Assembly: GCF_902652985.1 (NCBI RefSeq)
Contig: NC_047022.1
Span: 34,720,001-34,784,000 of the forward strand
DNA: 64,000 bases
Origin: Pecten maximus
Taxonomy: Eukaryota
Direction of reading: 5' to 3'
The notes under the pieces were generated by a model. It searched no databases. It was not told the origin of the DNA and saw only the letters and a program-made list of their open reading frames with translations. Numbering within the stretch: position 1 is the stretch's first letter; each line of letters opens with the position of its first letter. A program made the translations under genes and the position numbers. Positions 14,967-58,100 of this stretch are shown one piece after another.

Positions 14967-14974
14967 TATATAAG
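14967..14974 (+). promoter_or_regulatory. Possible TATA box upstream of CA exon 1a
   Basis: tatataag ~40 bp upstream of the ATG at 15014. Confidence 0.3.
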
Positions 14975-15013: not shown

Positions 15014-15116
15014 ATGTCGAACATGGTTTTGGTGCCAATGACAAGCTCTGCAGTTGGTCTGGAGATCTTTTTATTGATCCTTGCTCATTTGGTGGATCCG
15101 ATCTCCGCAGGAGCAG
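15014..15116 (+). CDS. Candidate alternative first coding exon 1a of carbonic anhydrase (MSNMVLVPMTSSAVGLEIFLLILAHLVDPISAGA-G)
   Basis: ATG, hydrophobic core, small residues at the cleavage end and a phase-1 CAG|GTAGGT donor; in frame with exon 55140. Confidence 0.6.
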
Positions 15117-16375
15117 GTAGGTTCCGTATTGATAATATACAGTATCTGTAGTGTGTGTTTAAGACAATATAGTAATTCATTTCTAGATGTCGGTATACAA
15201 TTATGTTTCTTAGTGCCCTGCAACTCCTTTATGTATTTTTACTGATGTTAGATTTATGGGAGATAAGCATAGCTTGATATGTTCATGTATTAATTGATCT
15301 TATTGGCAATGTTTTCATATCAATAATGCAGTTTGAAATAAATAATATAATTCCGTTCTTTCTATTAAATGAATACTGCCTATATTTCAATACACATGCA
15401 CAAGTAAGCAAATGTTTAATAATTATGATCGTAAAAATGTTATTCAAAATTGTTACTGGGTGTCCTGTTTAACACCTTTTATTGAATTGCAATTATGTAC
15501 AACCTGCAAGAGAAAGTTTCTATAACAGCATAGCGAGTCTGAAGCTTACGGAAATGTTAACATATACAAAATTTGAACCAAGTGCTGTTGATCTGTACCA
15601 CAGGATACGAGTAACCCTAGTCACATTTGTCATTTTAAACTATTGACGCGAGTGTACCTAGCTGTTTAACTTTACTTATTTCGTTTGTTTGATGTTGTTT
15701 AGTTATGCCAATATTTTGCCCTAATGACCTTTACACTGTGTGGGCCGTTAAAAGTGTAATAATCAACCACGTGTCATGTTAATACATCATGAAGTTTAGC
15801 GTATGGTTATGCACGTGGCTGTGGTTTGAATGGAAAAGTTTGTTAAATAGTTGGTTAGCAGGTAAAACCTACTACATTGAGAGACCTGCTCCAATGGGTT
15901 GGCTTATAACGTGATGCACTGTAACGACGATACATTAGTTTCACCGTCACGCATACGTATTGTGCATCATTTGTCTGTATTATCGTCCTCTTTACTCTTG
16001 TTTTTTAGATTGCGTTGCAATGTTAACGTTTTATCAACTCATAGCCATTAAATCCTGAATTGGTACCTTTATTTACGTAACGATATGCCAATATACATTG
16101 CATCAGTATGCAACCTCCGTCGAAATGAATAGTCATAAAAATTGTTACCACGAATACCGGTCAGCTGTAGTACTGTTTGTGTGAGCCTCCCGAAAACAGA
16201 AGAGCCATTCCAATAAATGTGGATATAACCCTACACAAAACCCATTTTTAGGGACAGAATATATTATCTTTCTACCGTATACATACACCTTTAAGTAACA
16301 CTCAATATATTATTGCATCATTGGTATCCTTCACTCCTTCACGGTAATATAGTTAGTTATTGCATTATAATGTTT

Positions 16376-16695
16376 CTGTCGTCCCGGTACTACTAGGAAT
16401 TGTGGGGTATTGTCTATCGAACCTGTATTACAGTAAATCATGCTGTTATTTCTGTCGTCCCGGTACTACAGGGAATCGCTTTGTTTTTCTATCGAACCAG
16501 TATTACAGGGAATCACGTTGTATTTCAATCGTCCCGATACTACTATGACTCGTGGTGTATTTTCTATCGTCCCGGCACTTCTGGGACTCGCGCTGTATTT
16601 TCTGTCGTCCTGGCTTGACTGTGACTCGCGCTGTATTTTCTATCGTCCCGGCTCGCCTGTGACTTGCGCTGTATTTTCTATCGTCCCGGCATTAC
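16376..16695. repeat. Degenerate ~39-40-bp tandem repeat (tgtattttctatcgtcccggc...)
   Basis: About 8 diverged copies. Confidence 0.85.
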
Positions 16696-17284
16696 TGACA
16701 TACATGTTGTATTGCACATGTATTTCAGTTAGCTTTCGTCCAATTGACACAGAGTTAACTTTCCTTTCTTTTGTCCAACTTAACTTTTAACTGTCAATTA
16801 CATTACCTTTATTCAAAAACAACATTAGTGTCTTCGCTGATGCTGATCGGACCGTAAAGGTGTTGGTATTGCATTTATAAGTGTTCTATAGAAAGGTAAC
16901 CAGGCAGTTTGTGTTAAATCGATATAGTTATTCCGTAAGGTGACAAATCTCGAATCACATCAGTACCCAAGACGGATCATGTTTTACAATAACAGATAGT
17001 TTCAAATATTTAACCGTGTTCAGTCATTAATTATTTTGTAGCCTTAGAATGAAAAAAAACCGTCTGTAGGTGACTAATTTGCGAATTGAATAATCAATAT
17101 TTAAACATGGAAAATGTTGCTTTGTAGTTTAAGCTGCAAACAATGGCGCTTTCGATGTTAATTATGTTTCATATTTGACTCGATCGAAATATTATTGTGA
17201 TGGCACTGTTGGAATAAAAATGTCCATATTAAGTGTATAAAGGCTACTTACTCTGTTACTTGCATTTGTAATAAAACGGAGAGC

Positions 17285-17800
17285 TCGTAAGAATTGTACC
17301 TGCTGCCCCCATTGCATGATCGTAAGAGGCGACTAAACTTGGGATCTTATCTTTTCCCTTCTTTCTTTACAACTTTCTTCTTCCTAATGTCTCCCTTGAC
17401 AATGCCCCACTTTTTGCCTTTAGTTGAGCGTTCGCCACTGTGAGAAAGGTTTTGGGTTCTGTCCCCTAGCCGAGACATACCAAAGTCTTTAAAAATGGTA
17501 GTTGCTACTCCTGCTTAGCGCTCAGCATATTTGGAGTGGTACGACTGGTTCGCCCGTTGTCAGTATAATGTGACCGGGTGGGGTGTAATGCTGGGTGTCT
17601 TCGGCAGTATGCTTCAGTGAGGTGACACTATAAATCGGCAAAAGTTCCGGCCTATCACAAGGAGACTTGACACGAACATACCGCAGCCTCCCAAAACACA
17701 CATACGCACTCGCCACACGCATTCATGTCGCACTCACGGGAGGCCGTCCTTAAATGACCTTAGCTGTTAATAGGACGTTAAACAAAATAAACCAAACCAA
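17285..17800 (+). mobile_element. SINE family A, best-preserved copy
   Basis: Structured head, decayed tRNA-like segment (tagttgagcgttcgcc...gggttctgtcccc), CATACCAAAGTCTTTAAAAATGGTAGTTGCTACTCCTGCTTAGCGCTCAGCAT (Meta-domain-like) and a LINE-type tail with AAACC. Confidence 0.9.
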
Positions 17801-17802
17801 TC

Positions 17803-18200
17803 ATACAGGAACAGGGAAATAATATGCCTGCTATAGCTCACTGGGTGTCGTGAGAGGCGGCTAATTGTGAGCGCCGCGCCCTGCAGGGTCGAGGGTGGTT
17901 TCCCTTCAGTTCAAGGGACATTGGAGAGGTCAAGAATAAAGCCCATTGTATCTCGTTGCTTCACAGAAGGCAACTAAAAGTGGGCAACTTGAAGAATCGA
18001 GTATTTTCTTCTGTGTCTTCTATAAGGGAATAATGAAGAGACCAAATCAAATCATCTACTCCACAACACTTGGTATCTTAAATGCTTTCTTTCCTTATTA
18101 ACTGCTCTTTATTTGCTTTGTTTTCTTACTCTAGGTGTCTCGTTGACACCCGTCTTAATATTACCCCGGCTATTGCGAGGACGAAAAACCCCTAAAAATT
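17803..18200 (+). mobile_element. Related non-autonomous retro-element with two tandem structured motifs and a LINE-like tail
   Basis: gtcgtgagaggcggctaa and gttgcttcacagaaggcaactaa variants of the SINE A head motif; tail cgtcttaatattaccccggctattgcgaggacg..aaacccc; minus-strand relative at ~47870-48060. Confidence 0.55.
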
Positions 18201-21200: not shown

Positions 21201-21536
21201 CAGGCGGTGGTAGTCTTCGATATTGTAAAATAAACAAATTGATGGAGCCATCAGATGTCGCAGTTCAACAGGATGCGACAATTAATAGAACATGTTCCTG
21301 TTTATCACCAAGAAGCTAGTCACTAAAGCACCGTTAACATTGTTACGTATCAGATTATGTCCTTTGAAGATAGCAATAAAATATGTCCATTAGGAGTTAC
21401 GTAGATAGATGTAATTACAAGAGTTGTTCTATTGTTTGTCATTGATGTTAAACATCTAATAGCCTTTGCGTAAGTGTTTACTGCGAATGTAGACAGATTA
21501 TTGGAGTGTTTTTCTGGCGCTTGCTGCGAATACAAA

Positions 21537-22736
21537 TTACCTTATTGAGATATCACTGTATGGTACCAACATGTACCGCTTTATTTACCTTATTGAGATA
21601 TCACTGTATTGTACCAACATGTACCGCTTTATTTACCTTATTGAGATATCACTGTATTGTACCAACATGTACCGCTTTATTTACCTTATTGAGATATCAC
21701 TGTATTGTACCAACATGTACCGCTTTATTTACCTTATTGAGATATCACTGTATGGTACCAACATGTACCGCTTTATTTACCTTATTGAGATATCACTGTA
21801 TGGTACCAACATGTACCGCTTTATTTACCTTATCGAGATATCACTGTATGGTACCAACATGTACCGCTTTATTTACCTTATTGAGATATCACTGTATGGT
21901 ACCAACATGTACCGCTTTATTTACCTTATTGAGATATCACTGTATTGTACCAACATGTACCGCTTTATTTACCTTATTGGGATATCACTATTGTACCGAC
22001 ATGTACCGCTTTATTTACCTTATTGAGATATCACTGTATTGTACCAACATGTACCGTTTTATTTACCTTATTGAGATATCACTGTATTGTACCAACATGT
22101 ACCGTTTTATTTACCTTATTGAGATATCACTGTATGGTACCAACATGTACCGCTTTATTTACCTTATTGAGATATCACTGTAGTGTACCAACATGTACCG
22201 CTTTATTTACCTTATTGAGATATCACTGTATTGTACCAACATGTACCGCTTTATTTACCTTATTGAGATATCACTGTATGGTACCAACATGTACCGCTTT
22301 ATTTACCTTATTGAGATATCACTGTATTGTACCAACATGTACCGCTTTATTTACCTTATTGAGATATCACTGTATGGTACCAACATGTACCGCTTTATTT
22401 ACTTTATTGAGATATCACTGTAGTGTACCAACATGTACCGCTTTATTTACCTTATTGAGATATCACTGTATTGTACCAACATGTACCGCTTTATTTACCT
22501 TATTGAGATATCACTGTATGGTACTAACATGTACCGCTTTATTTACCTTATTGGGATATCACTGTAGTGTACCAACATGTACCGCTTTATTTACCTTATT
22601 GAGATATCACTGTATTGTACCAACATGTACCGCTTTATTTACCTTATTGAGATATCACTGTATTGTACCAACATGTACCGCTTTATTTACCTTATTGCGA
22701 TATCACTGTATTGTACCAACATTCACCGTTTTATTT
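21537..22736. repeat. Homogeneous 48-bp minisatellite (ttaccttattgagatatcactgtatKgtaccaacatgtaccgctttat), ~25 copies
   Basis: Directly visible; explains the repetitive ORFs at 21506-22745. Confidence 0.97.
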
Positions 22737-23090
22737 AGTTTGTGACATGCGTTAGCGATTACAGTAATGTTAATCTTTGTTAAAATCTACGTAAAACACC
22801 AGAACGATGTTTCCTGTTCGAATCGATACAATCTATCTTTAGTCTAGATGCAATGGAACACAGGGAAAATAAAAACTGATTGTTTTTTCTGTACCATTGA
22901 TGTAACCACACCTGTGTTTAATTCATCCCATTTTTAACAATTCTGTAAGCAAATCAACTTGGAACACACAGTCTTAGAACTGTGTTTTGCAGCCAATTCG
23001 AGTATAAACGTAGACGTCATCAGAAAAAGACGCCTTACTTTGCGTTACTTATTCCCGAGCTTTTATAACTAAGAAAAAATGGTTTTCTCA

Positions 23091-23443
23091 TTTTTAGGTC
23101 ATCTGACCCGAATGGTCAGGATGACCTATAATCATCATGCTTCGTCCGTCGTCGTGCGCCGTGCGTAAACTTTTCACATTTCAAACTTTTTCTCAAGTTC
23201 CACTGTTGGGATTTAGCTGAAACTTGCCTGTAATGATCCGAAGGTGGTCCTGACAAAGTGTTGTTATATTTTAAACTTCTTCAGTTCCACTGGTGCCATT
23301 GAGCTGTAACTTGCCTGAAATGATCCTGACCAAGAGTTGTTATTTTTCGGGTTGGTTCGAAATCCACTATACTTGCTACTGAGTATGTATACTACAATAG
23401 TACAAGATTCTTTAGAGTCAGATGACCGTTAAGGCCCTTGGGC
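23091..23443 (+). mobile_element. Short non-autonomous Helentron (HINE/pearl-like)
   Basis: T-rich start, ggtcatctgac sub-TIR with 5' stem-loop, (gtc/gtgc) microsatellite, 3' gtcagatgacc followed by a gccc..gggc hairpin. Confidence 0.8.
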
Positions 23444-24143
23444 ATACATAACCGTATGTGGAAAATAAATTCTTAGACTCGTGTCAATTCTATACACCTA
23501 ATATTAAACCTCGTTGAATAACCCATTGTTGCATTGACACAATTAAGTTTCTTTGTATCTACTCCTTAACGATCTGCTGACTCACCATTAAACGTCATGG
23601 AGGACATGAAAATCTTTGGTTGGGCGGAAATATATCAGTGAGAACTGCATGTCATCTCCTGGTACGGTTGTGGGATGTTCTCAAGGTCATACGATTACAA
23701 AGGCCGTCCGGCTCCTAAATCAATTTATCTAACTTGATAAAAAAAACACGTGACCATCATTTAGTGAAATAAACGTGTATGCACCAGGTAACGGCGGGTC
23801 ATAAAGCGGCTAACCCGACAAACGTCCCATACCCAGACTCTCAGTATGTGTATCAAGGTCACATTCAAGGTCACATTCAAGGTCACATTACACCTAGATA
23901 CCCAACGATTATGATAAGACGTTTTAAACTCAGTATGCATGCGTATATCAAAGTTTGACATCATTAGGCAATAACGCCACGTAGACATTTAACGTCGACA
24001 TAAATCCTTAGATATAAGTTGGAATATACTGTTTGACCAGCTTAAGGAATAATAAAATTACATATGATATATTGTAGCATATATTTTTATATGTAATATT
24101 ATATCGTATGTTTTAACATTGATATCATTTAGGTTCAGGTCGA

Positions 24144-26018
24144 TTTTTATTAGGTCATCTGACCCAAAGGGTCAGGATGACCTATAGTCATCGTGCTTCG
24201 TCCGTCGTCGTGCGCCGTGCGCCGTGCGCCGTCCGTAAACTTTTTCTTTCAAAACGCTACTCCTCCTTAACGCTTGGGTGGATTACTTCCAAATTTGGTT
24301 TGAAGCATCATTGGGGGAGGGCAATCATATTTTATATAAATGAGGCTGGTCTGACCCCTGGGGCCAGAAGGGCGGGGCCCCAAAAAGGGAACTTAGGTGA
24401 ATGTTGCTATAAAATCCTACTCCTCCTTTACCCTTGGGTGGATTACAACTAAATTTGGTGTGAAACATCATTGGGGGAAGGCGGTCATATTTTATATAAA
24501 TGAAGTTGGTGTGACCCCTGGGGCCTGAGGGGCGGGGCCCCAAAAGGGGAACTTTGATGAAATTTTGCTATAAAATCCTACTCCTCCTTAACCCTTTAGT
24601 GGATTTCAACCAGATATGTTGTGAAACATCATTTGGGGAGGGCGGTCATATTTTATATAAATGAGGCTGGTGTGACCACTAGGGCCTGAGGGGCGGGGCC
24701 CCAAATGGGGAACTTTGATGAAATTTTGCTATAAAATCCTACTCCTCCTTAACCCTTTAGTGGATTTCAACCAGATATGTTGTGAAACATCATTTGGGGA
24801 GGGCGGTCATATTTTATATAAATGAGGCTAGTGTGACCCCTGGGGCCTGAGGGGTGGGGCCCCAAATGGGGAACTTTGATGAAATTTTGTTATAAAATCC
24901 TACTCCTCCTTAACCCTTTAGTAGATTTCAACCAGATATGTTGTGAAACATCATTGGAGGAGGGTGGTCATATTTTATATAAATGAGGCTGGTGTGAGCC
25001 CTGGGGCCAGAGTGACGGGCCCAAAAAAGGGAACTTTGATGAAATTTTGCTATAAAATCCTACTCGTCCTTAACCCTTTGGTGGATTTCAACCAGATATT
25101 GTGTGAAACATCATTGGTGGAGGGTGGTCATATTTTATATAAATGAGGCTGGTGTGGCCCCTGGGGCCAGAGGGGCAGGGACCCAAAAGGGGAACTTTGA
25201 TGAAATTTTGCTATAAAATCCTACTCCTCCTAACACCCATAGTGAATTATGACCAAATTTGGTGTGAAACATCATTGGAGGAGGGAGGTCATATTTTATA
25301 TAAATGAGGCTGGTTTGACCCCTAGGGCCAGAGGGGCGGGGCCCCAAAAGGGGAACTTTGGTGAATTTTTGCTATAAATCCTACTTCTCTCTAACCCTTG
25401 GGTGGATTAATACGAAATATGGTGTGAAACATCCTTTGGGAAGGGTGGTCATATTTTTTATAAACGAGGCTAGTGTGACCCCTGGGGCCTGAGGGGCAGG
25501 GCCCCAAAAGGGGAACTTTGGTGAATATTTGCTGTTAAATCCTAATCCTCCCTAACCTTTTGGTGGATTACAACCAAATTTCATGTGAAACATAAGGTGA
25601 CGGCAATCATATTTTTTAATGAGACAGGTTTGACCCCTGGGGAAAAAAAGATGGGGCAAAAGGAGCGCTTAGGTTAAACATTTCTTAAAAATGCAATTCC
25701 TCCTTAATGCCTGAATTGATTACAACCATATTTAGTATGAAACATCATTGGGGAAAGGCAATCCTAATTGATATAAATGAGTCTTGTCTGACCCATTGGG
25801 ACAGAGGGGCATGCCCCAAAAATGGGAACTTGGCTAAAATTTTGCTTTATGATGCTGCTCTTCCTGGACAAGCTAAATGGATAAAAACCAAATTTGATCT
25901 AAAACATAACTGGCTGCGATAAATAATTTATGGTAATAATGCTGGATTGGGGTGTGTGTCCCTGCTGTAAGTGTAAGTGTTTGTCAGATGACCGTTAAGG
26001 CCCATGGGCCTCTTGTTT
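24144..26018 (+). mobile_element. HINE/pearl-like Helentron carrying ~10 tandem copies of a ~161-bp repeat
   Basis: Same ends as 23091-23443 (taggtcatctgaccc ... gtcagatgaccgttaaggcccatgggcct); aaaatcctac recurs at 24411, 24572, 24733, 24894, 25054 and 25215. Confidence 0.88.
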
Positions 26019-27428
26019 AGATAACGGGTGTGATTTCGCTGTAAAGCGATTGGATAAGAACCCATACTTCATCCCTGGTTATAATGAGCATTGTGTAAAA
26101 CCTGCAAATGTTGGTGAAATATAATATTGGCTTTCGTATTGATAGATTTCTCTTTACGTCACACTAAAATGAGCAGTCGTCATCCGTGTGACTCACATCG
26201 CGTTGTCTCAATCACGTGTTATCCCGGGGCCGAGTAGTAATACATTCTACAGGTGGCGGTAATGAAGCGTGGATGTAAATGGGCATTGTGTCGTTTTGCG
26301 GTAAATGTTGCTATTGAATAGTTCGAGTGGAAAAGTTGATACAGTGGTGATTTATCGCCATCAATGCCCTGTATGTAAAGTGTATATCAAACAGAACCAT
26401 ATTAAGTTTGTCACAGGATGAGATAATCCCACCAGTTTGGCGTTACATTCCAACACAAAACGAGAGAATTCATACCCTAAAATATCTATCTACAAATCAA
26501 TAAAACGATGTATCAATAGGTTTACACGCTGACTCATGTACAAATACAAGACCAGGAGTTCCAGCAGGATAAGATCGTAATGTCCATGTAAATCTAGGTC
26601 AAATCAAAGTAAAACGATCGTAAAATGAAAATCATGGTAGTGACAACGACCATATGGAAAATCGTCTATCAAAATTAGCAGCGTATAATTGTACTTCGTA
26701 TTGTGAATGGAAATGGTTAATTTCCTGCTGGGATCTTAACGATTGATCTCTGTACATCTCCCGAAATTCTGTGTTGGGTATATCAATAGTACATCTCATC
26801 TTGGTCTTTGTCGTGCGCTTACGCTCCACCTTTTTCATACATGCCGTTTTTTAACCAATACTGAGTACCTTCGAAAACAAACTAGGTATGTTTTGTCCAC
26901 AAGTCTTAACGGTGTGTGAATAATTGTTGTTTGGGAGAAGACTCTTCTAGTCAAAATGCACATCTTGAAGAAACAAGAAACCATCTCCACTGATGGCATA
27001 TATGAATTGTCCGTGTACATGTAGTGCACTGTAAGGGTTTGCACTTATTATAATACACCTATATATATATTTACATAATGCAATCCAAGAAAGAGATGCT
27101 TTGATTGCATGATCACCTTGCCTGTGGCGCCTCACGTGATATAAAGGCAATATCGGACTTATCTGAAACGAACACGCATATACAATAATGTATATTCGTT
27201 TTGCAAAAACACTAAGTAGCTTTGAGATGTATAAATTATCACGTCCTCTCTATCGTTATAGGATAGGCAACCTTACTTCCCTGGAGGCTCAAACATAGTA
27301 TATAACGATACACGACGGGTTTAGTTGTCTACATCGTTAAATTATTGTACGTTGTGTATTGGACAATGTTAAAATCGGTTAAATTATAAGATTCTAGTGG
27401 AACCCTACATTATACTACCGTCGATAGG

Positions 27429-27489
27429 ATGACATGTATTATTGTCTTGCTTGTTGTGGTGCTGCCGTATGTACAAGCATCAGTTATAG
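27429..27489 (+). CDS. Candidate alternative first coding exon 1b of carbonic anhydrase (MTCIIVLLVVVLPYVQASVI-G)
   Basis: Typical signal peptide (VQA cleavage) and a consensus AG|GTAAGT phase-1 donor; in frame with exon 55140. Confidence 0.65.
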
Positions 27490-27799
27490 GTAAGTATTCT
27501 TTACCCGTGTCTCACATCATCACTCAACACCTCTTTATGCATGCCTGTGTTGTATTGACGCTCTCACTCTATTGTTTATCTAAATAATGAAAGTATTTAT
27601 CCTTTTAGTCAGTTTTATTATTAGGTCTAGAATAAAGAAGTTATTTTCTAATCATTGGCGTTTTATTATCTAAATTAGGATTGATATTTGGATGCTTATA
27701 CCTGTGTATGTAAATTTTGTGGATTTATTTATTTCGAATATATTTTATTGTATATTACCAAATAAACTGGACATGACTTTAACAAAACGCATGATGTCC

Positions 27800-44384: not shown

Positions 44385-44540
44385 TATTTGTTTAACGTCC
44401 TATTAACCGTCAAGGTCATTTAAAGGCGGCCTCCCGTGCGTGCGATATACATACGTGTGGTGAGTATGTATGCATGTTTTTGGAGTCTGCGGTATGTTGG
44501 TGTGAAGTCTCCTTGTGATAGGCCGGGACTTTTACCGAAA
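44385..44540 (-). mobile_element. SINE family A 3' fragment
   Basis: Reverse complement of the tail and 3' body. Confidence 0.8.
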
Positions 44541-44799
44541 GGAACATAAAAATATCAAAGTCAATCCGTTAGACATATCAATATAAACGGTTATTGTAAT
44601 ATTCGTTATTGTTTTTGCATTGCTTTTATGGACAGTTGGAGCCATTTAGGGTCAAACAGTACCAGAAAAATAGGTTTGTTGGGTACGGCATATTCATTCA
44701 TAAATGGTTATTTATATACGGGAACATTACCTTTCCAAGAAACTAGTGTCGACGTAATGATTATATGACATAATTAATGGTGGATGAATGGAATGGTAA

Positions 44800-47060
44800 G
44801 ACGTAATATAAGGAAAAGTGACAGACTTAAAAAAAATAATGTTTGATAATAATTCAGAGTCCAATAAGAATAAATACAAGCATATGAGGAATAAAGTAAA
44901 TAATATGATAAAGAGGGCTAAAGAAATATTCCATGAAAACATTAACACAGTTATAGACAATAGTAATAACAACCCAAAAGTGTATTGGAAACTTCTAGGA
45001 AACCTTATCAGAGGTAAACAAAAAAACAAAAAAACCACAGATATATCTCCCCTACTTGATAGTACTACAAATGAAATTATATATGACAACAATAGGAAAT
45101 GTGAACTGTTGAATAAATATTTTAGCTCTGTGTGTACTCTGTCAGAAAATGTCATAGATAAAGAATTGCCCTTTTTTGAAAAGAGGACAGATTCTATTTT
45201 ATCAGAAATTCATATAGTTTCCAGTGAAGTTGAAGACATTATAAACATTCTAGATGTTTAAAAGGCGTCAGGTCCTGACGGTATTAGCCACAGAATGCTA
45301 AAATTACTCTCAAGTGAAATTTCTATACCACTTTCTTTTATATTCAATTATTCTTTGTCGTCCTGTATATTTCCTGAGAGCTGGAAAATTGCTCATGTCA
45401 TGCCTATATTTAAGGCCAATGACGCAAGCATTGTCTCTAATTACAGACCTATCTCGCTTAAGTTGTATAGGTAAACTTTTTGAGCGTGTAGTATATAAGT
45501 ATATCTACATTTTTTTAATCGAAAAAGACCTTATTTATAAGTATCAGTCTGGATTCCTACCAAATCACTCCACAACACAACAACTTATTGAAATATATCA
45601 TTCAATCATTTCTTCCATAAAAAAATATGAACATTCTATCTTAATTTTTTGTGATTTTTCTAAGGCATTTGTCCGCGTGTGGCATAAAGGCCTCTTACAT
45701 AAACTCGACAATTATGGTTTCTCTGGACCTCTTCTTCGTTGGGTGGTTACATGTAGTTATCTTTCAAAAAGAAAACAAGCCGTATTTATCAATGATTCAT
45801 TTTCCCCTCTTAAGCCTATAAATACTGGTGTCCCCCAAGAGTCAGTTCTTGGTCCACTTTTCTTTCTTCTATACATAAATAATATTTCCTGTAATCTTTC
45901 ATCTTTATCTAGGCTTTTCGCTGACGATACCTCTCTATCCTACGCGTCATATGACCTCAACCTTATTGAGACGGAGGCTAAACGCGACTTATTAAAACTT
46001 GAAATTTGGTCCAATGAATGTCCTTTAATCCTAATAAAACCGAGGCCCTCGTAATATCAACTAGATAACTTCCTTTTGTTCCGTCCTTTACATTCGACAA
46101 AACCCCGATTAAAATAACAAACCACCATAAACATTCTTTCTGATGATTGTAAGTGGAACATACACGTAGAATCTATAGTAAATAAGGTGACTAAATATAT
46201 AGCCACCCTCCGTAAATTAAAACTTATCTTAGACAGGAACACATTAGAAAAAAATGTCCCTTACCTATATACGACCATTACTTGAATATGCATGTGAAGT
46301 ATGGGACAACTGCGGTACAACAAACTCATTGTTATTAGAAAAGATAAATCTAGAGGCCGCAAGAATAGTCACAGGGCTGCCCATATTCACAAAACAGAGT
46401 TCTTATACATGTATCTAGAAACCGGTTGGTTACCTCTTTCGAAGAGAAGAGATGCTCGGAAACTTTCCTTATTCTATTCTATAGTCAATAATCTGGCACC
46501 TACTTTTCTTATCGACCTACTACTAATGTATATTGGCAACATAGCTCCTTATAATTTACGAAATGCAGATTTATTTAGGGAACAACACTTTCGTCTACAA
46601 CTATCAAAAACTCTTTCTTTCCTTCTACTTCAAAACTGTGGAATGACTTAAATAACACTATCAGAAACTCGCCTACTTTAAGTTCCTTCAAATCTAATCT
46701 AAAACGATATATGACAGTAAACAGTATATATGACAAGCATTTTATCAGTTATGGTCCTATATTCTACATAACTGAATAAGAAATCGAACAGGTGCACTAA
46801 GCTATGATATTTTTAGAGCCAATCTCGTTGATTTACCTGCTTGTCAATGTGGACATCCCTGTGAAGATTCCCATAATGTTTTCCTTAACTCTCCCCTGTA
46901 CAACAACTTAAGAGGAACTCTTATTGCTGATTTAACCTGGTACGGTCCTGTTAATGTAGGTATACTTTGCAATGATGACAGGAATATCTCCTCAGCTGAC
47001 AATATAAAAATCGCTAAAGTTGTGCAAAACGTCTTGAGAAGGTCGGAAAGATTCGACTAA
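44800..47060 (+). pseudogene. 5'-truncated decayed CR1/L2-group LINE ORF2 (reverse transcriptase)
   Basis: KASGPDGI, FPESWKIAHVMPIFK, NYRPIS, QSGF, FCDFSKAF, GVPQESVLGP, LFADD, EYACEVWD and a C-terminal CQCG motif; several frameshifts and stops. Confidence 0.93.
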
Positions 47061-49301: not shown

Positions 49302-49404
49302 AGCGGACTGAAGTTAGCAGCGGGTTCGTTATTCGTTATTGGGGATTCGAATAACGAATCCACTGCCAGCAGGATAACGAATCCGCTGCTAACTTCAGTC
49401 CGCT
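49302..49404. mobile_element. 103-bp mini-MITE / hairpin element
   Basis: ~31-bp TIR agcggactgaagttagcagcgggttcgttat; flanks aacaagttc / aagaagttc (8/9 TSD). Confidence 0.75.
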
Positions 49405-50910
49405 AAGAAGTTCATTATACAATTATGACTATTGTTAATAGCGCAAACAAAGTGGAACATAGCAGATATTTGGATACATGCTTGATTCTCGGCTTGCTAG
49501 TGTTATAAAGTTATGCCACATGTATCTGTAAGTGTTAACCTGTAAATCGGTGTATATTTTTTGTAACAAGGTTTATGTTGTAACAGTTGCCCCCTAACAT
49601 CAATACAATTGATACCTCAAATTCAGGTTTTTGAAATGGTAATACAATAGTCTTAGATTATAGTGCTGTGTTCATTTTATTATTAGCAAATACATAATTG
49701 AGTACCAAAGTTGATGGACCTCATTTGACATTTAATGTCCGGGGACTGTTGGATATTTGATTGATACAAAACAGCAATGATATTCTATTCTGAAAAAAAA
49801 CGGCTAAAAGGGCTAGAGATATAATCAACCTCGACCCTCTTTTGACCTACAGGTGTGCTATTTTAGATTCGGGGTCAGTAGGTGTCTCGATTTGCTACAG
49901 TTATTATACTTTCATTATATGGCGAGCAATTGTAGGGAAATGATGATTCATCGTTGTATTTGAATCATCTAGATTTCTATACGTGTCTGAATCGGGTGAA
50001 TGGCTAATTATGGTTTTTAGATTGCTATTCGGTAGTATTCGATTGCTGTTGCGACACCATACTGATCTTGTTTACGAAAGAGTGCATCGGCTATTTTTTC
50101 TGTTGAACGTTACTTTCGTATATTTTTATATCTGGGTCAATGTTAATGTATTACTGTTTACTTTAATTTCCAAACCTTAAGGAAGGACTTCGGTTACTTA
50201 CATAAAATTGAATACCTGTTCACGTTATGGAACCTTAACATATGGAAACGTAAAATGTGGTTAAGGCGCTTCATGATTAACTGTAGTTTAATAACTCATG
50301 ATATCATATAATACTAACACCTAAGACCAATTGATGCCATATGAATATGAAGCGGTTTTATACAAAAATGTCCTACAAAAACAAGTAAAATACATTTCGT
50401 GATAATCATTTCGTTACCGACAGTAGTAACAGAAGACTTTTACACGAGAGTTCCTGGAATATATAATTAATCAAACTAGTATGTCAATTCAATTAAAACG
50501 ATCGTTATATATTGTGATAATAACCCTTGAACAGGAACTCTTAATTAAATATTACTAGTATGAGATCATCCATATATTACATGGCCAGTGTACGTTACTC
50601 TGTGATCCGTTACCAATGGCAACATTCCTTGCATTTTAAACATCTTTAAACAGGACACAACTTAACTTCTAGACATGAATATCATGAATTAATATCTATA
50701 ATGATAACCTAAATGTGGCTGCCTTGGAGTAGATGTATCTACAGTGTGTCAGGTTTTTATCGGGACCCCGGGGACTCATGGTTCAATACGCATACCAGGT
50801 ATCCAGTTATGGGTGAATGACCAGAGTTTCAGCATTCACTGGTCGTAACAAAAGCGAAATAAAAGCGATGCCAACTTTAGAATGCAGTGATTGTGTTAAA
50901 GGTGTCAGAC

Positions 50911-51001
50911 ATGGCCACTGCAGCAGATATTTTCGTGTTCTTAGCATTGGGTACATGCCTGTCTTCGTCTGTGTTGGGATTCGCCAAGAATGGTGTTGTA
51001 G
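50911..51001 (+). CDS. Candidate alternative first coding exon 1c of carbonic anhydrase (MATAADIFVFLALGTCLSSSVLGFAKNGVV-G)
   Basis: Good Kozak context (gacATGg), signal-peptide-like sequence with VLG cleavage, phase-1 AG|GTCAGT donor; in frame with exon 55140. Confidence 0.7.
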
Positions 51002-51841
51002 GTCAGTAGATTTTTATATATTTACCTAATCATTCGTATTTAGTTATATATTTGTTTGTTTTTGGTAATATGTTATGTATGTTGGTTTCAAGAGCTTGTT
51101 TAGGTATCAAAAAAATCCAAACATACAGTCATGTGTTGTTACTAATCACCGCTTCGCTCAGAATACCAAGGTATTTCATGGCGAACAAAACGGCGTTGGA
51201 TTTTATATTAATTTTGTCATGAATTTTTCATCAATGTGAACTGCTCACTTGTAACTAATTATTTTCTACGTTAGGTTAAGATATTTCACATTCATAATAA
51301 CGCTTTTACAAGGAATCCGTATTGTAGCCGATTGGAGTATTGGATATATATATATACTTGTCTGACAATGCAGATGAGTGTCACGCTAATTAATGTGAGG
51401 GTTAACACTACCCAGCCTAAGGATGTTGTTCCTATTGGCTGACTTATAATTTGAAACATTTTGTCTTTATAACTTGAGAACAAATTCACACAAACGACGT
51501 GTATCAATTTTTTTTACTTTTGACCTTTAAAATAATGCTATATTCGGCAAAACATGTATGAAGCTGTACAAAAACTTAAACACTCGGTAGTTAAAGTTAC
51601 ATCTTTATAGGCGTCCTTTCTTTAGCATAAACAAGGCTTATACCTTACGGCATCCTTAAACCATTATCCTAATACATCCATTACATAATAACGGTATTTG
51701 GAGAACAAGTAAAAGTTTACTTATTTAAATATGCCTAGACGGGTTATTTCTTAATTTCTGTTGACCCTCAATAATTGTGTTTATCTAAGTTTTGAATAGT
51801 TTTGCCGATAAAATCTTTGGTATGACGATTTCTTTTGTTGT

Positions 51842-52185
51842 TTATAACATAATAACACAAGTGGATATTCGTCTTCGACTTGGGTTGTTGTGTATATAAC
51901 ATACTAGTACAAAATAGTATTTGTTTCGACTTGGATTGTTATATATATATATTAACATATTAGTACAATGGATATTCGTCTTCGATTTGGGTTGTTGCGT
52001 ACATACCATATTAGTACAAAATAGTATTCGTGTTTGACTTGGGTTGTTGTGTATATAACATATTAGTACAAAGTAGTATTTGTTTCGACTTGGGTTGTTA
52101 TATGTATACATGTAACATATTAGTACAAAATAGTATTCGTCTTCTACTTGGGTTGTTGTATATATAACATATTAGTACATAATGG
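51842..52185. repeat. ~55-60-bp tandem repeat (tataacatattagtacaaaatagtattcgtcttcgacttgggttgttg)
   Basis: About 6 copies. Confidence 0.9.
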
Positions 52186-52419
52186 TATACCTCTCCGACT
52201 TCTTAACCTGTCCGTCCATTATGCAACTTCCAAACGAATATGTCCGGTATCCGATAATTACCTCGGCGTTTAAGAATCTACTTTAGTCGTGCTATGAAGA
52301 AACCTAAGGCAATAGCATATATATAACACGAGCAAGACAGGTGATTGTGTTCTGATAAGTCACGGTCCGATGCCTCTTGTAGGGGCAGCAGAGAGTTAAT
52401 TTTTGTAATAGGAAGGAGT

Positions 52420-52510
52420 AATGAAAAATACCATGTCTAAGCCGGGATTCGAACTAGCAATCGTTCGCTCTCAAGGCCACTAAGCTAAAGGGAAATTCCC
52501 ACTAGTCTGC
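52420..52510 (-). mobile_element. tRNA-derived SINE head fragment
   Basis: Minus strand tagcttagtgg (A box) ... gttcgaatcccggc (B box), without a complete cloverleaf. Confidence 0.5.
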
Positions 52511-53144
52511 GATAGTAAAGTGGACTTATGTTCTCTACTTTTACAAATCTATTTAAGATATACCTTGAATTTGAACAATAGTTTTTACCGCTGGCCAAGT
52601 GCTAGTTTTAAAAACCTAATGTGATAAGCTCTCACCTACCTGCCCTAAACCAATATCTGTATTTTTATCTAAACTTTGTCCTTACATTAACTTGTCTTAA
52701 AAACCTGTATATCAATTAGAATCGCATTCAATAATTACCGGCGTGTATTAACTGAATGATACCTGATGTATTAACAACATTCTCAAAGGACCCTGTGTTA
52801 CACTTTATCTCAGTGTTAAACTGACGTATCAAACGAACGGATTATTGAATGGAAAAACCGATAGACAGGTACGCTAAATATAGTATGGAAACGATTTAGA
52901 CCGGTATGTCGCATCCTCTCATATACCTTTATGTTGTTATTGTTGCTGATCCGATATATTCTGTCTTTATTCTTCGTTTGTTTATGTTTTGTTGCGATTA
53001 TAGTCATTTATTGAACGGATGTCGCTAAAAAACGAAAGTAACATGCTGGTGTTGCACTCTCTGGTCGTCCAGTAGCCTGATAACAGTATAGCTGTGCGCA
53101 CCGACCGTCTTTGATACATGTACATTGCACTGGGTATCAAACTC

Positions 53145-53545
53145 GATTGTTTTCCAATTAGACAGATAGATATGACATGTTTTCTAATAAGACGGATATT
53201 TTTATGGCATGTTTTCTGAATAGACATAGTTATAATAAAAGTTTTCTAATTAGACAGATAGTTATGGCATGTTTTAAGACAGATAGTTATGTATGACAAG
53301 TTTTCTAAATAGACATATAGTTATAATATGGTGTCTTACATGGCAGATAGTTATGAAGTTTTCTAATAAAACATATAGTTATGGCATGTTATATGAAATG
53401 ACATATAGTTATAATATGTTTTCTAATTAGACTGATAGTTGGGACATGTTTTCTAATTAGACAGATAGCAATGACATGTTTTCTAATAAGATATATAGTT
53501 ATGACATGTTTTCTAATAAGACAGATAGTTATAACATGTTTTTAG
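53145..53545. repeat. ~30-bp degenerate tandem repeat (ttttctaataagacagatagttatgacatg)
   Basis: About 13 diverged copies. Confidence 0.88.
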
Positions 53546-55139
53546 CTTTTTAACCGAATTAAGTTTTTGTTTATTGGATTGTAACAAACCTTCTAATATA
53601 GCTAGTCTAAAATGATATACAAGCTAAGAAATACAATTGATGGACCGGTAATCAATGGATATAACACTATGGTATCGGTAGCTACCACTTGTTGTCACTA
53701 CATGTTACACTTTTTTAGATAAACAAAATATTTTTCATAATTGATATTTACTTTATTGACGAGTTCGGGATTATACTTAAATTTTGTTGACAGAAACGTA
53801 GAAAATGTGTTTACTTGTATTGACAGTAAAATTACGCTATACATGTTAATAGATATAACTACAGTGGCCTTTCACCTGCTTATCGGCTTATAGTACGGTA
53901 TAATTAATATAAACAGATGTAAGACTTAATCAATGATACAAAACTCTATCCTTGTGATTTGTTTACAGCTTTAGTTAGAATGAAACAATTGTTACAAACA
54001 AATACAATCGGGTGATTGTAAATAAAAGTGTTATTGGATCGGGTTTTCGAATTGGTTGGAGGTGGAAATCAAGCATCATCACACTCCACTGACCAACAGG
54101 ACATGGTTGAGAGGAGTACTGGTTTAATCACGATACCAGAAGTCGAAACAACCCTGATCGATATAGGATATGATAGTAAATTCTTTCATCCTATACCGAT
54201 GCGAGCTGTTGATGTACAGGGAAAATTGTTTATTGAACAAGTGTGTACGTATGTATAGTTCATATATATCTCATTTTACAGAAATGCAAACATATCGGCG
54301 TTGTCATTATCTACAAAAATGTCCAGACTTCTGATTTTGATATAAAAAACTGTAGTCTCATTAGGTTTCTGTTGTCAGACAAAACAGCTTATAAAAACTA
54401 TTCTAAATCTGGTACTGAAAATACAACAAATATTGTACTGAAAATAGACATTTGACAATGCCGCTGGAAATCAAATCTACGGATAAATTAACATAATAAT
54501 GGATGCATCGTTGGTTGATAAATAATGCATCCATTAATAAGAAAACGCGTGTAATATAGGGTCAATACATACGGTTTTGTAATTTGAATTTTACATGGAT
54601 AAGTGACCTTCCCAAAGAAAAAGTGGCATAGCCATTGCCCTGTCAACAATTTAATTGTATTTTGAAATATATCTGCATAATGTATATGGGTTCATTTTCA
54701 TGTCGATCTCCGGCACGACGACCTGTGTCATACTAAATAAGGTATAACACTGGTTTCTGCTGATTTATTCTATTGTTTCCTAACTGGTACACATGTCGGC
54801 GTCATTACTTTGTTTGATGCATCATTTAAATGGTAATTATTTTAACTACGGACAAGTATTCACCACTCGTTCTGATCATAATATTATCATAATCCTTGAT
54901 TACAATTAACTTGTGGTTACAAAATGTCACAGCTGGCAAAAAAGTCTGATTTATTTCAACGTTTGGAGTGAGGAAGACCTGCGTAATTTATGTACGATGT
55001 AATCAGTGTGAATGGATGTATGGAACTCGATGACACTTCCGTTTTCGCATTGCACATTTCATTCAAAATAACTGCAATATGTTCAGCAGTAAAACATGGG
55101 AAATCTTTCTACATCACTGGTTTGTTTTGACTTTTGCAG

Positions 55140-58100
55140 GAAATGAGTGGGACTACGAAGGAGATATCGGTGAGTACCATATCACGTAAATTATTATAAC
55201 AATATAAAAAAAACCACTACATCACCTATCTTATCATTTATTAATGTTAAAATATGGCAACATTAACGTTAATATCTTGTCTAAGACATACATCACCTTG
55301 TCGAGTTATATGTTCAGGTATAGCAAAAGATATTTCCATGTAATTATATTTCTTGAAAGTATTTGTACATAAACTGTTGCAAACAATAGTACAAAGTATA
55401 GCAAAGTGACTTCTAATTTACAGGCCCTCGGCAATGGCATAAGAATTATCCTCAGTGCGCTGGAAAGCGCCAGTCCCCGGTCAGTATCGACACGACGCTT
55501 GTAGTATATGATGAGGCTTTAAAAGGACTACAGTTAGACGGCTACAACAGTGTGTCGGCTGTTAACATGAGCCTCACCAACAACGGACACACAGGTATTA
55601 ATGCTATATATCGTTAACAACACCACAGGTATTCATATGTAAAATACGTATCCAAATAGATGTGTTGATAGGAAGTGCATATCGAATCATTAGAATAGAT
55701 TTTAAGAAAATAACAGTCTTATATAGCTAGGTTAATGATACAGATACGAACACCCGTTACAGGATTTGACCATTTCCTGTTTTATCTTTAGTTCAAGTAG
55801 ACCTTAATGGTAAATCACTCACTGTCCAGGGTGGAGGGCTACCTGGTGTTTACAAGGCCGCTCAGTTCCATTTCCACTGGGGAGCAGTAGACAAACGTGG
55901 TTCCGAACACAATCTCGACAACCAGAACTTTCCCATGGAGGTAAATATTACATGTAACAAAAAGGTCGTTTGGACATAGCATTTGGATTTCTAAAACTTC
56001 ATCTGAAGAACATCATCTGTATATAAAAATTAGTTTGGCTGATTAACTATGATTATTTTAGTATCAATTTATATTCTTTTTAGATGCACATCGTCCATTA
56101 CCAGAACAAGTACACAAGTATAAAGGAGGCTATGGTTCATGATGAAGGTCTTATGGTTCTCGGTTTCTTTTTCAAGGTGAGAGAGAAACGTCCGCACAAT
56201 CACATTCTGCTACATGGAAACAGGCATCAGAAAAGAGAAGTTTTCAAAAGCATAGCAGAAATGTTGAATTAGACATGTCGAACGAGTCCACTTGATAAAG
56301 AAATTTGTAAATCGATGCTAATAAAACCATACCGATGTTATTCTCATCCCCTGCTCGTAAACAATGATTCCATAATTACAACTGAATCAATCATTATTCA
56401 TTTCCATTTAAATAAGGCATTATGTCATCAAGATCGCTTTCCCATTTTCCGAATTTTACTTTTGTATGCTCACTTACATTTTATAGCTGAAATCCCCTTG
56501 TTATCGGGTAACATCCCTCCTGTCCTTGTATAATTCGACATGTGATATCGTCTAGGATTTATTTTCTAGGTAGGACGACACAATCGACACTTCGATGACG
56601 TATTGGGTCATTTCAGTGATATAACACATAAAGGTAGGTAAATCCAAATACAAAAACATCCAAATACACGTGTTTTTATTGTAATAAATGTATTAGAAAT
56701 CATTTAAAGTCATCCGTACAGGATTAGACGTCATTGATTCGTGTTGATATGCCGAGTGGTCACTCTATTACCACCCTAGAGATTGTGACTTAACCTAGAT
56801 TAGACCCTAGTTTAGACCCTAGATTAGACCTAGATTAGACCCTAGATTAGACCTAGATTAGACCCTAGATTAGACCTAGATTAGACCTAGATTAGACCCT
56901 AGATTAGACCTAGATTAGACCCTAGATTAGACCTAGATTAGACCTAGATTAGACCTAGATTAGACCCTAGATTAGACCTAGATTTAACCTAGATTAGACT
57001 TAGATTAGATCCTAGATTAGACCTAGATTAGACCTAGGTAAGACCCTAGATTAGACCTAGATTAGACATGGATAAGACCCTAGATTAGACCTAGATTAGA
57101 CATGGATAAGACCCTAGATTAGACCTAGATTGAACCTAGATTTGTATGGCGGTTGTCGTTGATGAAGCAATAGACGCTTATCCCTTAGGATCACCTGGTA
57201 TAATTTTTCTTGTGCTTTTCATGGGTCAAGTGTATATGTTTTGTATGTTGTTTCATTGAATTTCAGTTGTCATTAGTATGTCGGTATTCTATGTTATTTT
57301 CGAAAACTATCTTAAACTCCACAACAACCTACAGTGATAACATCATTTTTGTCACGTTTTGAACGTTCAAAAATCTCATGACTTAAGTTCGAGGGAAAAT
57401 AATTCATAACTTTACATAAGTAAATGAATAGATATACGATATAAGCAAATATACCTTAGACACTGATTTAATTAAGGGGATAATACATCCCCATATTGAT
57501 TCGTTCACTTTTAATTTGTGGCACGTGATTTCGTCCGTTGTAAGTTGGTAGGTCATAACTAAAACAGGAAATGGAATATTTTCAGATGATCACGTGAATA
57601 TCCCCACAATTCCTCTCCGGCAGTTAATGGCAAACAACCTTGACCTGTACTACCGATATCAGGGAAGTCTCACTACACCACCCTGTTACGAGAGTGTGAT
57701 TTGGACCGTATTCAGAGAACCCATTGAAGTATCAGAGTACCAGGTAGGGTTTTCTGCAAATTCTTCCCAGTGAAATAGTATCGTTGGTAACAATTTGTTG
57801 GTAAAATGAATAAGATATCCGACATCTGACAGACTTTAACAAAAACAATTTGAATTAAACTAAGTTGGTTTTCACCAAGATCGAGTTGAAATCCCATTAC
57901 ATATCCTCTGAGATGGCGGAATTAATATAATTAGCACATATTGATCAGTATAGGAAAATAAAAATAAAATAAGATCTAGGACCTAAGAACATTTGCGTAC
58001 CATGTTATGACTTTTCTGATACAATGCACGATATTTCATTTAATGCGTAATTTACACGTTTACTTGTTGAATGTGATTTGATATTACAAATTTTACGGAA

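What the first reader, a model, noticed from the sequence alone, without database searches (positions are those of the whole stretch)
15014..55169. One carbonic anhydrase with at least three interchangeable signal-peptide first exons spread over ~40 kb
Seen in sequence: the first shared CA exon (55140-55169, G-NEWDYEGDI) starts in phase 1 and has no signal peptide, although the protein ends in a GPI-type tail. Three mutually unrelated exons each have an ATG, a hydrophobic signal peptide and a strong phase-1 donor: 15014-15116 (MSNMVLVPMTSSAVGLEIFLLILAHLVDPISAGA), 27429-27489 (MTCIIVLLVVVLPYVQASVI) and 50911-51001 (MATAADIFVFLALGTCLSSSVLGFAKNGVV). Each gives an open frame to the stop at 58466 (330, 316 and 326 aa). 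I found no other gene body between them that they could belong to. Inference: a variable-first-exon/constant-region locus with separate promoters. It would put essentially the same mature enzyme in different tissues or stages (e.g. mantle, gill, larva), as an alternative to the gene duplication usually reported for molluscan CAs. Each exon also has a possible AG acceptor just upstream (15013, 27427, 50880), so non-coding leader exons may exist.
Basis: partly seen in the sequence, partly recalled or inferred. Interest (0 to 1): 0.8.

Follow-up and report, generated by a model that had tools for sequence, protein, structure and literature searches.

The report
Scallop carbonic anhydrase, two alternative first exons

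Summary
All three proposed exons lie at the stated coordinates. Each opens a frame through seven constant alpha-carbonic-anhydrase exons (55140-58466), giving 330, 316 and 326 aa. The window holds no second CA body.

Transcript contigs from four public runs (four studies) settle two of the three junctions. In X3 and X6 the sequence joined to acceptor 55140 is the 3' end of exon 15014-15116. In X1 and X18 it is the 3' end of exon 27429-27489. These introns are 40,023 and 27,650 nt long. Each run shows one form only, and the body alleles do not track the choice of first exon.

The proximal exon 50911-51001 has no RNA cover in three runs and no junction in any. Its donor is weak, and a third candidate of that grade is roughly what chance gives. 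It stays a sequence-only prediction.

Separate promoters are inferred, not shown: TATA motifs sit at 14967 and 27230, and the contig 5' ends fit them. Tissue or stage specificity could not be tested because the runs are coded.

The design matches known twin-promoter genes with alternative signal peptides, such as the GPI-anchored IgLONs, Bdnf and Nematostella ShK-like2. It is a new member of a known kind and of moderate interest.

The parts
15014..15116 (+). Alternative first coding exon E15. It supplies an ATG (further in-frame ATGs at 15023 and 15038), a 34-aa signal peptide and a phase-1 donor. It is spliced to 55140 across a 40,023-nt intron.
   Evidence: Sequence. Open frame of 330 aa. 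Contigs of runs X3 and X6 carry its last 30+4 nt directly in front of 55140, and that 30-mer is unique at 15083-15112. Single copy in the genome.
27429..27489 (+). Alternative first coding exon E27. It supplies an ATG, a 20-aa classic signal peptide (likely cleavage VQA|SV) and a phase-1 donor. It is spliced to 55140 across a 27,650-nt intron.
   Evidence: Sequence. Open frame of 316 aa. Contigs of runs X1 and X18 carry its last 30+2 nt directly in front of 55140, and that 30-mer is unique at 27458-27487. Single copy in the genome.
50911..51001 (+). Candidate third first exon E50, predicted from sequence only. It has an ATG in good Kozak context, a 30-aa hydrophobic peptide and a weak phase-1 donor G|GTCAGT.
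   Evidence: Sequence. Open frame of 326 aa. Donor score 2.74 against 6.06 and 6.93. Zero depth in X3, X6 and X18, and no 51001>55140 joint in any of the four runs.
55140..55169 (+). Constant exon 1, a 30-nt mini-exon encoding (G)NEWDYEGDI(G). It is phase 1 at both ends and is the common acceptor for the alternative first exons.
   Evidence: Joint 55169>55424 is present in all four runs.
55424..55594 (+). Constant exon 2, the N-terminal part of the CA domain. It holds Cys23-equivalent (YPQC) and the proton-shuttle His (NNGHT).
   Evidence: Pfam PF00194, E 1.4e-15, profile positions 2-57. Joints in all four runs.
55792..55940 (+). Constant exon 3. It holds FHFHWG (two zinc-binding His) and GSEH.
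   Evidence: PF00194, E 2.3e-14, profile positions 59-108. Joints.
56084..56176 (+). Constant exon 4. It holds MHIVHY (third zinc-binding His).
   Evidence: PF00194, E 9.9e-8, profile positions 109-139. Joint.
56570..56633 (+). Constant exon 5.
   Evidence: Reading frame and AG/GT borders. In all four runs the letters that follow 56178 are this exon's sequence (table 7).
57586..57743 (+). Constant exon 6. It holds GSLTTPPC (Thr199/200 and Cys203 equivalents).
   Evidence: PF00194, E 2.1e-18, profile positions 166-216. The best solved relatives are CA14, CA12, CA9 and CA4.
58242..58466 (+). Constant exon 7: the end of the CA domain, then small residues (SGGENGAG) and an 18-aa hydrophobic tail of GPI-signal type. 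Stop codon TAG at 58464-58466.
   Evidence: PF00194 tail, E 0.0046.
58467..59730 (+). Inferred unspliced 3' UTR of about 1.25 kb, with AATAAA at 59709-59714.
   Evidence: The length of the X18 contig (2353 nt) puts its 3' end near 59714 if the UTR is collinear with the genome. AATAAA lies at 59709. This is inference.
14967..14974 (+). TATATAAG motif 47 nt upstream of the E15 ATG, a candidate core promoter. An Inr-like TCACATT lies at 14989-14995.
   Evidence: The X3 and X6 contigs end at about 15015-15018. The evidence is weak, because the motif occurs about once per 474 nt in this window.
27230..27237 (+). TATAAATT motif 199 nt upstream of the E27 ATG, a candidate core promoter. It predicts a start site near 27260.
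   Evidence: The X18 contig extends about 154 nt 5' of the ATG, to about 27275 if collinear. Weak evidence; inference.

Best explanation
This is one single-copy alpha-carbonic-anhydrase gene of the extracellular, membrane-associated type (CA4/9/12/14-like, with a probable GPI tail).

Its seven constant exons (55140-58466, with a 3' UTR to about 59.7 kb) lack a start codon and a signal peptide. These are supplied by at least two mutually exclusive first exons far upstream: E15 (15014-15116) and E27 (27429-27489). Each carries its own AUG and an unrelated signal peptide. Each splices in phase 1 to the same acceptor at 55140.

Each first exon most likely has its own promoter; this is inferred. 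Signal peptidase should remove almost all of the variable part (rule-based cleavage sites AGA|GNEW or ISA|GAGNEW for E15, and VQA|SVIGNEW for E27). The mature enzymes would then differ by at most about three N-terminal residues. The choice of first exon would therefore be regulatory, setting where, when and how much enzyme is made, and perhaps how efficiently it enters the ER. It would not change the enzyme.

E50 (50911-51001) may be a third such exon, but it is unsupported.
For: Shown:
- Canonical GT..AG junctions 15116|55140 are present in contigs of X3 and X6, and 27489|55140 in contigs of X1 and X18. That is four studies (table 7). The overhanging 30-mers map uniquely to 15083-15112 and 27458-27487.
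- The same contigs continue through constant exons 1-4 and into exon 5 (tables 5, 7, 8). The X6 (1905 nt) and X18 (2353 nt) contigs are near-full-length mRNAs.
- The frames are open: 330 and 316 aa.
- The CA body and both first exons are single-copy, and no spliced retrocopy was seen.
- Body SNPs at 55521, 55823 and 55832 occur with either first exon: X1 (E27) and X6 (E15) carry the alternative alleles, while X18 (E27) and X3 (E15) carry the reference. The two forms are therefore not haplotypes (table 3).
- CA identity and membrane-type affinity rest and on motifs read.

Inferred:
- Own promoters, from TATA motifs at 14967 and 27230 and from contig 5' ends that fit them.
- Signal-peptide cleavage sites, from the -3/-1 rule.
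Against: - No start site was mapped. The 5' parts of the contigs could not be read; only their last 30 letters are shown.
- Both E15 contigs stop within 1-4 nt of the AG at 15012-13, so an upstream non-coding leader exon is not excluded.
- TATA motifs are frequent in this AT-rich DNA (about 1 per 474 nt).
- Contigs drop rare variants, so 'one form per run' does not prove exclusive use.
- Signal peptides and the GPI signal were judged by rule, not with SignalP or PredGPI.
- Three of the four runs are only guessed to be RNA, although their intron-less joints show that they are cDNA.
Confidence: 0.85

Rival explanations
1. One reading: a variable-first-exon array with three or more promoter-specific signal-peptide exons, E50 included, used in different tissues or stages.
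For: E50 has an ATG in strong Kozak context, a plausible signal peptide, the correct phase and an open frame of 326 aa. It lies 4.1 kb upstream of the body, a typical place for a first exon. It is single-copy. Only four runs were examined, and contigs show presence, not absence.
Against: E50 has no RNA cover in X3, X6 and X18, although the gene is expressed in those runs. No 51001>55140 joint was seen in any run. The donor GTCAGT is weak (2.74 bits). No TATA motif lies upstream. Control classes yield 0-1 such candidates per roughly 60 kb, so one extra hit is near chance.
Confidence: 0.3
2. One promoter with alternative splicing. Transcription would start at or upstream of E15. E27 would be an internal exon entered through the AG at 27426-27427, so the E27 form would be E15(+leader)-E27-body and not the product of a second promoter.
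For: An AG lies two bases before the E27 ATG. The X1 and X18 contigs have about 115 and 154 nt of unread sequence 5' of the E27 ATG.
Against: Splicing E15 to 27428 would read G|GA TGA, an immediate stop. This would turn E15 into an upstream ORF. The X18 contig would then have to begin near 14964, upstream of the TATA motif and the predicted start site of E15. The pyrimidine tract before 27427 is poor. A TATA motif at 27230 fits a collinear 5' UTR of about 169 nt. The E15 contigs join directly to 55140.
Confidence: 0.08
3. An artefact: the two forms come from different haplotypes, collapsed paralogues, a retrocopy or chimeric assembly of contigs.
For: Only assembled contigs were available, not raw reads. 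De Bruijn contigs can be chimeric.
Against: Each junction was found independently in two studies, at exact canonical GT/AG borders and in frame. The exons and the body are single-copy. Body alleles do not co-segregate with the first exon (table 3).
Confidence: 0.03

Closest known systems
IgLON genes Lsamp, Ntm and Opcml: twin promoters 1a/1b (PMC5288359)
   Same: The products are GPI-anchored extracellular proteins. Two widely separated alternative first exons each encode a different signal peptide and splice to common exons. The processed proteins have identical N-termini, so the choice is regulatory.
   Different: These are vertebrate neural adhesion molecules, not enzymes. Their promoter-specific expression has been measured, whereas here promoter independence and tissue use are only inferred.
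Nematostella ShK-like2: alternative promoters giving alternative signal peptides (bioRxiv 10.1101/2020.05.28.121442). Bdnf is cited there and in PMC5288359 as similar.
   Same: [quoted passage not shown] In that case the usage is stage-specific.
   Different: The product is a secreted neuropeptide or toxin-like peptide. Conservation across species was demonstrated there and could not be tested here.
Vertebrate membrane-associated alpha-carbonic anhydrases CA4, CA9, CA12, CA14 and CA15
   Same: The alpha-CA fold signature extends across the exons. The zinc-binding His triad, Thr199, Glu106 and His64 equivalents are present, as is the extracellular Cys23-Cys203 pair. There is an N-terminal signal peptide and a C-terminal hydrophobic membrane or GPI signal. 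The best solved matches of exon 6 are CA14, CA12, CA9 and CA4.
   Different: I know of no report, and found none in the searched library, that these genes use alternative first exons encoding signal peptides. From my own memory, not checked here: mouse Car6 has an alternative first exon that removes the signal peptide, rather than swapping it.
Clustered variable-first-exon loci (protocadherin alpha/gamma, UGT1A)
   Same: Several upstream first exons, each presumed to have its own promoter, splice to one shared set of constant exons.
   Different: In those loci the variable exons are many tandem paralogues that encode a functional variable domain. Here there are two proven exons, unrelated to each other, and they encode only a cleaved signal peptide.

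Membership tests
Alpha-carbonic anhydrase (Pfam PF00194) | Sequence match to the family profile along the whole domain | tested here: met
   Searched exon by exon, exons 2, 3, 4 and 6 pass the 27-bit cut-off (58, 54, 32.3 and 67.3 bits). They cover profile positions 2-57, 59-108, 109-139 and 166-216. Exon 7 covers 218-253 at 17 bits.
Alpha-carbonic anhydrase (Pfam PF00194) | Catalytic residues: three zinc-binding His, plus Thr199, Glu106 and His64 equivalents | tested here: met
   Read in the translation: FHFHWG, MHIVHY, GSEH, SLTTPPC and NNGHT. Assignment to human CA2 numbering comes from my own knowledge of the family.
Extracellular, membrane-anchored CA group (CA4/9/12/14/15-like) | N-terminal signal peptide | tested here: met
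   By rule only. E27 has the h-region CIIVLLVVVL and the site VQA|S. E15 has the h-region AVGLEIFLLILAHLV and the site AGA|G. Kyte-Doolittle 9-residue maxima are 4.13 and 2.84. SignalP was not available.
Extracellular, membrane-anchored CA group (CA4/9/12/14/15-like) | Extracellular disulfide pair (Cys23-Cys203 equivalents) and closest solved relatives in this group | tested here: met
   YPQC lies in exon 2 and TPPC in exon 6. The top PDB hits of exon 6 are CA14 (1.3e-12), CA12, CA9 and CA4.
Extracellular, membrane-anchored CA group (CA4/9/12/14/15-like) | C-terminal GPI-attachment signal | tested here: inconclusive
   The tail SGGENGAGQ followed by IMIPLYIIVLSVCISLLL (18 hydrophobic residues, no cytosolic residues) fits the rule. 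No GPI predictor was run. A C-terminal membrane anchor is not excluded.
Alternative-promoter gene with alternative signal peptides (IgLON 1a/1b type) | Two or more mutually exclusive first exons spliced to one common acceptor in mature transcripts | tested here: met
   Junction 15116|55140 is present in X3 and X6, and 27489|55140 in X1 and X18.
Alternative-promoter gene with alternative signal peptides (IgLON 1a/1b type) | Each first exon carries its own AUG and signal peptide, and the mature protein is essentially identical | tested here: met
   The cleavage sites are rule-based inference.
Alternative-promoter gene with alternative signal peptides (IgLON 1a/1b type) | Independent transcription start sites or promoters | tested here: inconclusive
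   TATA motifs lie at 14967 and 27230, and the contig 5' ends are compatible with them. The motif is common, and the 5' sequences of the contigs could not be read.
Alternative-promoter gene with alternative signal peptides (IgLON 1a/1b type) | Differential use between tissues, stages or conditions | not testable with these tools
   Each of the four runs shows only one form. Run identities are coded, and contigs drop minor forms.
Clustered variable-exon/constant-region locus (protocadherin, UGT1A type) | Variable exons are tandem paralogues that encode a functional variable domain | tested here: not met
   The three exon regions show no significant similarity to each other. They encode only 20-34 aa signal peptides.

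The most novel reading that the evidence does not exclude
The locus may be a true multi-promoter array with three or more signal-peptide exons: E50 plus possibly others not expressed in the sampled runs. Usage would be partitioned between shell-forming mantle, gill and larval stages. The different signal peptides would also tune the efficiency of ER entry, and so the surface dose of the GPI-anchored enzyme. This would give scallops a way to sub-functionalise a biomineralisation or acid-base enzyme without gene duplication.
Probability: 0.25. Interest if true: 0.55.

Novelty: new member of a known kind. Interest (0 to 1): 0.35.

Why it matters
Carbonic anhydrases are central to shell formation and acid-base balance in bivalves. 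Expression studies such as ocean-acidification work usually count them gene by gene. This gene has two promoter-specific mRNA forms whose first exons lie 28 and 40 kb upstream. Short-range gene models, qPCR primers placed in the 5' end, and promoter analyses of the proximal region would all miss or confuse the real regulatory units. The case also gives an invertebrate enzyme example of the 'same mature protein, different signal peptide and promoter' design, which is known from vertebrate GPI proteins. It does not reveal a new mechanism.

Tried and rejected
1. My starting expectation was wrong. I expected only the proximal exon E50 to be real and the distal ones to be chance (stated). The transcript contigs overturned this.

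2. I tried to find annotated or assembled full-length isoforms in the protein collections, without success.
- The representative search with exon 7 returned only ORF fragments about 45-57% identical, from other species' genomic contigs.
- The word search with exon 2 returned nothing in its length range. A blank there says nothing about full-length proteins.
- P0001 and P0003 hit only this gene's exon 7 in the window's own genome, so they are likely orthologues. Their contigs are 1.2-3.6 kb and hold only the last exon, so conservation of the first exons could not be tested.

3. The joined, spliced protein was not sent to any database, family, fold or look-up tool, because it has no reference. 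Joining was done only inside local scripts on window.fa, to check reading frames and to look for a second CA body in the window.

4. I looked for relic CA exons or duplicated mini-exons downstream of E15 and E27 and found none.

5. I looked for more candidate first exons in the 40 kb upstream of the window and found none on the + strand.

6. An in-frame ATG at 55079 could extend constant exon 1 upstream without splicing. No RNA cover lies before 55136 in X3, X6 and X18, so I rejected it.

7. A tRNA scan of 51.8-53.2 kb found nothing.

8. The read laying and the look-up of sequencing runs caps (one call each) prevented laying reads on E15 and E27 themselves.

Full report
**Identity of the DNA.** The window is G000:C8:34720001-34784000 of a genome of 918,306,378 bases in 3,983 contigs. 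These two figures are exactly those published for the king scallop Pecten maximus assembly (PMC7191990). I take that as the source; this is an inference from matching numbers.

**The observation.**
- The three proposed exons are present as described.
- The constant body has seven exons with AG/GT borders: 55140-55169, 55424-55594, 55792-55940, 56084-56176, 56570-56633, 57586-57743 and 58242-58466.
- The first constant exon is a 30-nt mini-exon. It is phase 1 at both ends and has no ATG.
- Joined in a local script, E15 (15014-15116), E27 (27429-27489) and E50 (50911-51001) each give one open frame, of 330, 316 and 326 aa.
- The joined models were built only inside scripts from window.fa. They were not sent to any database, family, fold or look-up tool, all of which were used exon by exon by reference.

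**What the body encodes.**
- Exon by exon, it matches Pfam PF00194 over profile positions 2-253.
- The translation shows the zinc-binding His triad (FHFHWG, MHIVHY), GSEH, SLTTPPC, NNGHT and the extracellular Cys pair.
- Exon 6 is closest to solved CA14, CA12, CA9 and CA4.
- The C-terminus has small residues followed by 18 hydrophobic residues, which fits a GPI signal by rule.
- Such a protein must enter the ER, so whichever first exon is used has to supply a signal peptide.

**Is it more than chance?** I scanned for an ATG, an open frame of 15-45 codons, a hydrophobic core and a phase-1 GT donor, using a rough donor matrix of my own.
- On the + strand upstream of 55140 the scan finds only the three claimed exons.
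- Other phases, the minus strand and the 40 kb upstream of the window give 0-1 hits per class, once 3.
- E15 and E27 have strong donors (6.1 and 6.9 bits). E50 is weak (2.7 bits), and one extra hit of that grade is about what chance supplies.
- All three regions are single-copy in the genome and unrelated to each other.
- The window holds no second CA body and no relic CA exons.
- Between the exons lie satellites and a reverse-transcriptase remnant.

**Transcript evidence.**
- Twenty public runs from 8 studies hold part of the CA stretch. Most hold 0.19-0.27 of its words, near the exonic fraction.
- I laid contigs of four runs from four studies on 50300-56299.
- All four show the canonical joints between constant exons 1-2, 2-3 and 3-4, and they continue into exon 5.
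- At the acceptor 55140 every run has a contig that carries foreign letters upstream.
  - In X3 and X6 these letters end ...GCTCATTTGGTGGATCCGATCTCCGCAGGA, followed by gcag.
  - In X1 and X18 they end ...GGTGCTGCCGTATGTACAAGCATCAGTTAT, followed by ag. X1 has one A/G difference.
- These 30-mers occur once each in the window, at 15083-15112 and 27458-27487. They are the 3' ends of E15 and E27.
- Junctions 15116|55140 and 27489|55140 therefore exist in mature transcripts, across introns of 40,023 and 27,650 nt.
- The X6 (1905 nt) and X18 (2353 nt) contigs are close to full-length mRNAs.
- The length of the X18 contig places its 3' end near 59714, at an AATAAA at 59709.
- Body SNPs at 55521, 55823 and 55832 combine freely with either first exon (table 3). 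This rules out a haplotype or paralogue explanation.
- No retrocopy was seen in the genome.

**E50.** Its region has zero depth in X3, X6 and X18. In X1 the whole stretch, introns included, is covered at about 10x as unspliced background. No 51001>55140 joint appears in any run. Contigs show presence and cannot show absence, so E50 is unsupported but not refuted. I put it at about 0.3.

**Promoters (inferred).**
- TATATAAG lies at 14967, 47 nt before the E15 ATG, and an Inr-like TCACATT lies at 14989-14995.
- The E15 contigs end at about 15015 and 15018.
- If the start site is that close to the first AUG, initiation may use the in-frame AUGs at 15023 or 15038. The hydrophobic core would be unchanged.
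- TATAAATT at 27230 predicts a start near 27260. The X18 contig would reach about 27275 if it is collinear with the genome.
- The motif is frequent here (about 1 per 474 nt), and the 5' letters of the contigs were not shown. Leader exons entered through the AGs at 15013 and 27427 therefore remain possible.
- A single-promoter model (E15 to E27 to body) would create an immediate stop (GGA TGA) and does not fit the contig lengths. I give it 0.08.

**Mechanism.** Two alternative first exons, probably with their own promoters, each deliver an AUG and a signal peptide to a common body. By the -3/-1 rule, cleavage at VQA|SVIGNEW (E27) and at AGA|GNEW or ISA|GAGNEW (E15) leaves mature enzymes that differ by at most about three residues. 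The variable part is therefore regulatory. Each of the four runs shows only one form, which is compatible with sample-specific promoter use. The runs are coded and minor forms are dropped from contigs, so this is not evidence of tissue specificity.

**Comparison with what is known.**
- The design is that of the IgLON genes Lsamp, Ntm and Opcml. These are GPI proteins with promoters 1a/1b, alternative signal peptides and identical processed N-termini (PMC5288359).
- Bdnf and Nematostella ShK-like2 share the design.
- It is not a protocadherin- or UGT1A-type variable-exon array, because the exons are unrelated and encode no mature domain.
- Full-text searches found no report of alternative first exons in a bivalve carbonic anhydrase.
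- Public gene annotation, which I could not consult, may already list the isoforms.

**Verdict.** This is a new member of a known kind, with interest 0.35.

Noticed in passing
window 52398-52510: A short repeat whose + strand reads agccgggattcgaac, the reverse complement of a tRNA T-arm. Contigs from X1, X3 and X6 pile up here at higher depth and run on into unlike sequence such as AAGGGGGCCACGGTGGCCGAGTGGTTA. It looks like a tRNA-derived SINE on the minus strand, transcribed from other copies. ARAGORN finds no tRNA gene.
   Followed up: partly
window 56793-57142: A minisatellite in intron 5 of the CA gene, with an 11/23/34-nt unit ACCTAGATTAG(AC) in about 31 copies.
   Followed up: no
window 13410-14370: Tandem array of 52/103-nt and 39/79-nt units, about 960 bp long. 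It ends about 600 bp upstream of the E15 TATA motif. Whether it affects the E15 promoter is unknown.
   Followed up: no
window 21537-22737 and 24257-25846: Two large satellites inside the E15-E27 interval: a 48-nt unit in 25 copies at 96% match, and a 161-nt unit in 10 copies. The long 'ORFs' at 21506-22745 are translations of the first array, and their Leader_Trp Pfam hits are low-complexity noise.
   Followed up: partly
window 44727-46651: A retroelement remnant on the + strand within the large intron. ORF 45314-46054 matches the reverse transcriptase family RVT_1 (E 2e-16).
   Followed up: partly
window 14855-15151: The E15 reading frame stays open for 53 codons upstream, to an ATG at 14855. 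It runs through a locally GC-rich stretch (0.46 against about 0.33) that ends in AAG|GTATGT at 14961/14962, 52 nt before the AG at 15013. No RNA contig reached this region, so it could be coincidence or a leader exon with a mini-intron.
   Followed up: partly
window 27484: Run X1 reads A where the reference has G in E27. The predicted change is Val to Ile at residue 19, next to the predicted signal-peptide cleavage site. It looks like an allelic variant (table 7).
   Followed up: no
window 55079-55139: An in-frame ATG 61 nt upstream of constant exon 1 would give the peptide MFSSKTWEIFLHHWFVLTFA fused to GNEW without splicing. No RNA cover was seen in X3, X6 or X18. It is probably just the translation of the polypyrimidine tract.
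   Followed up: yes
G000:C8:34680001-34720000 (loci L007-L010): The 40 kb upstream of the window holds several long ORFs (412-560 aa, on both strands) that look like transposable elements. It has no further signal-peptide-exon candidate on the + strand.
   Followed up: partly
genome-wide: At least about 15 other alpha-CA loci are present, including tandem pairs or clusters at C4:40.116-40.126 Mb, C8:15.62-15.66 Mb and C11:9.95-10.02 Mb. The gene studied here has no CA neighbour within the window.
   Followed up: no
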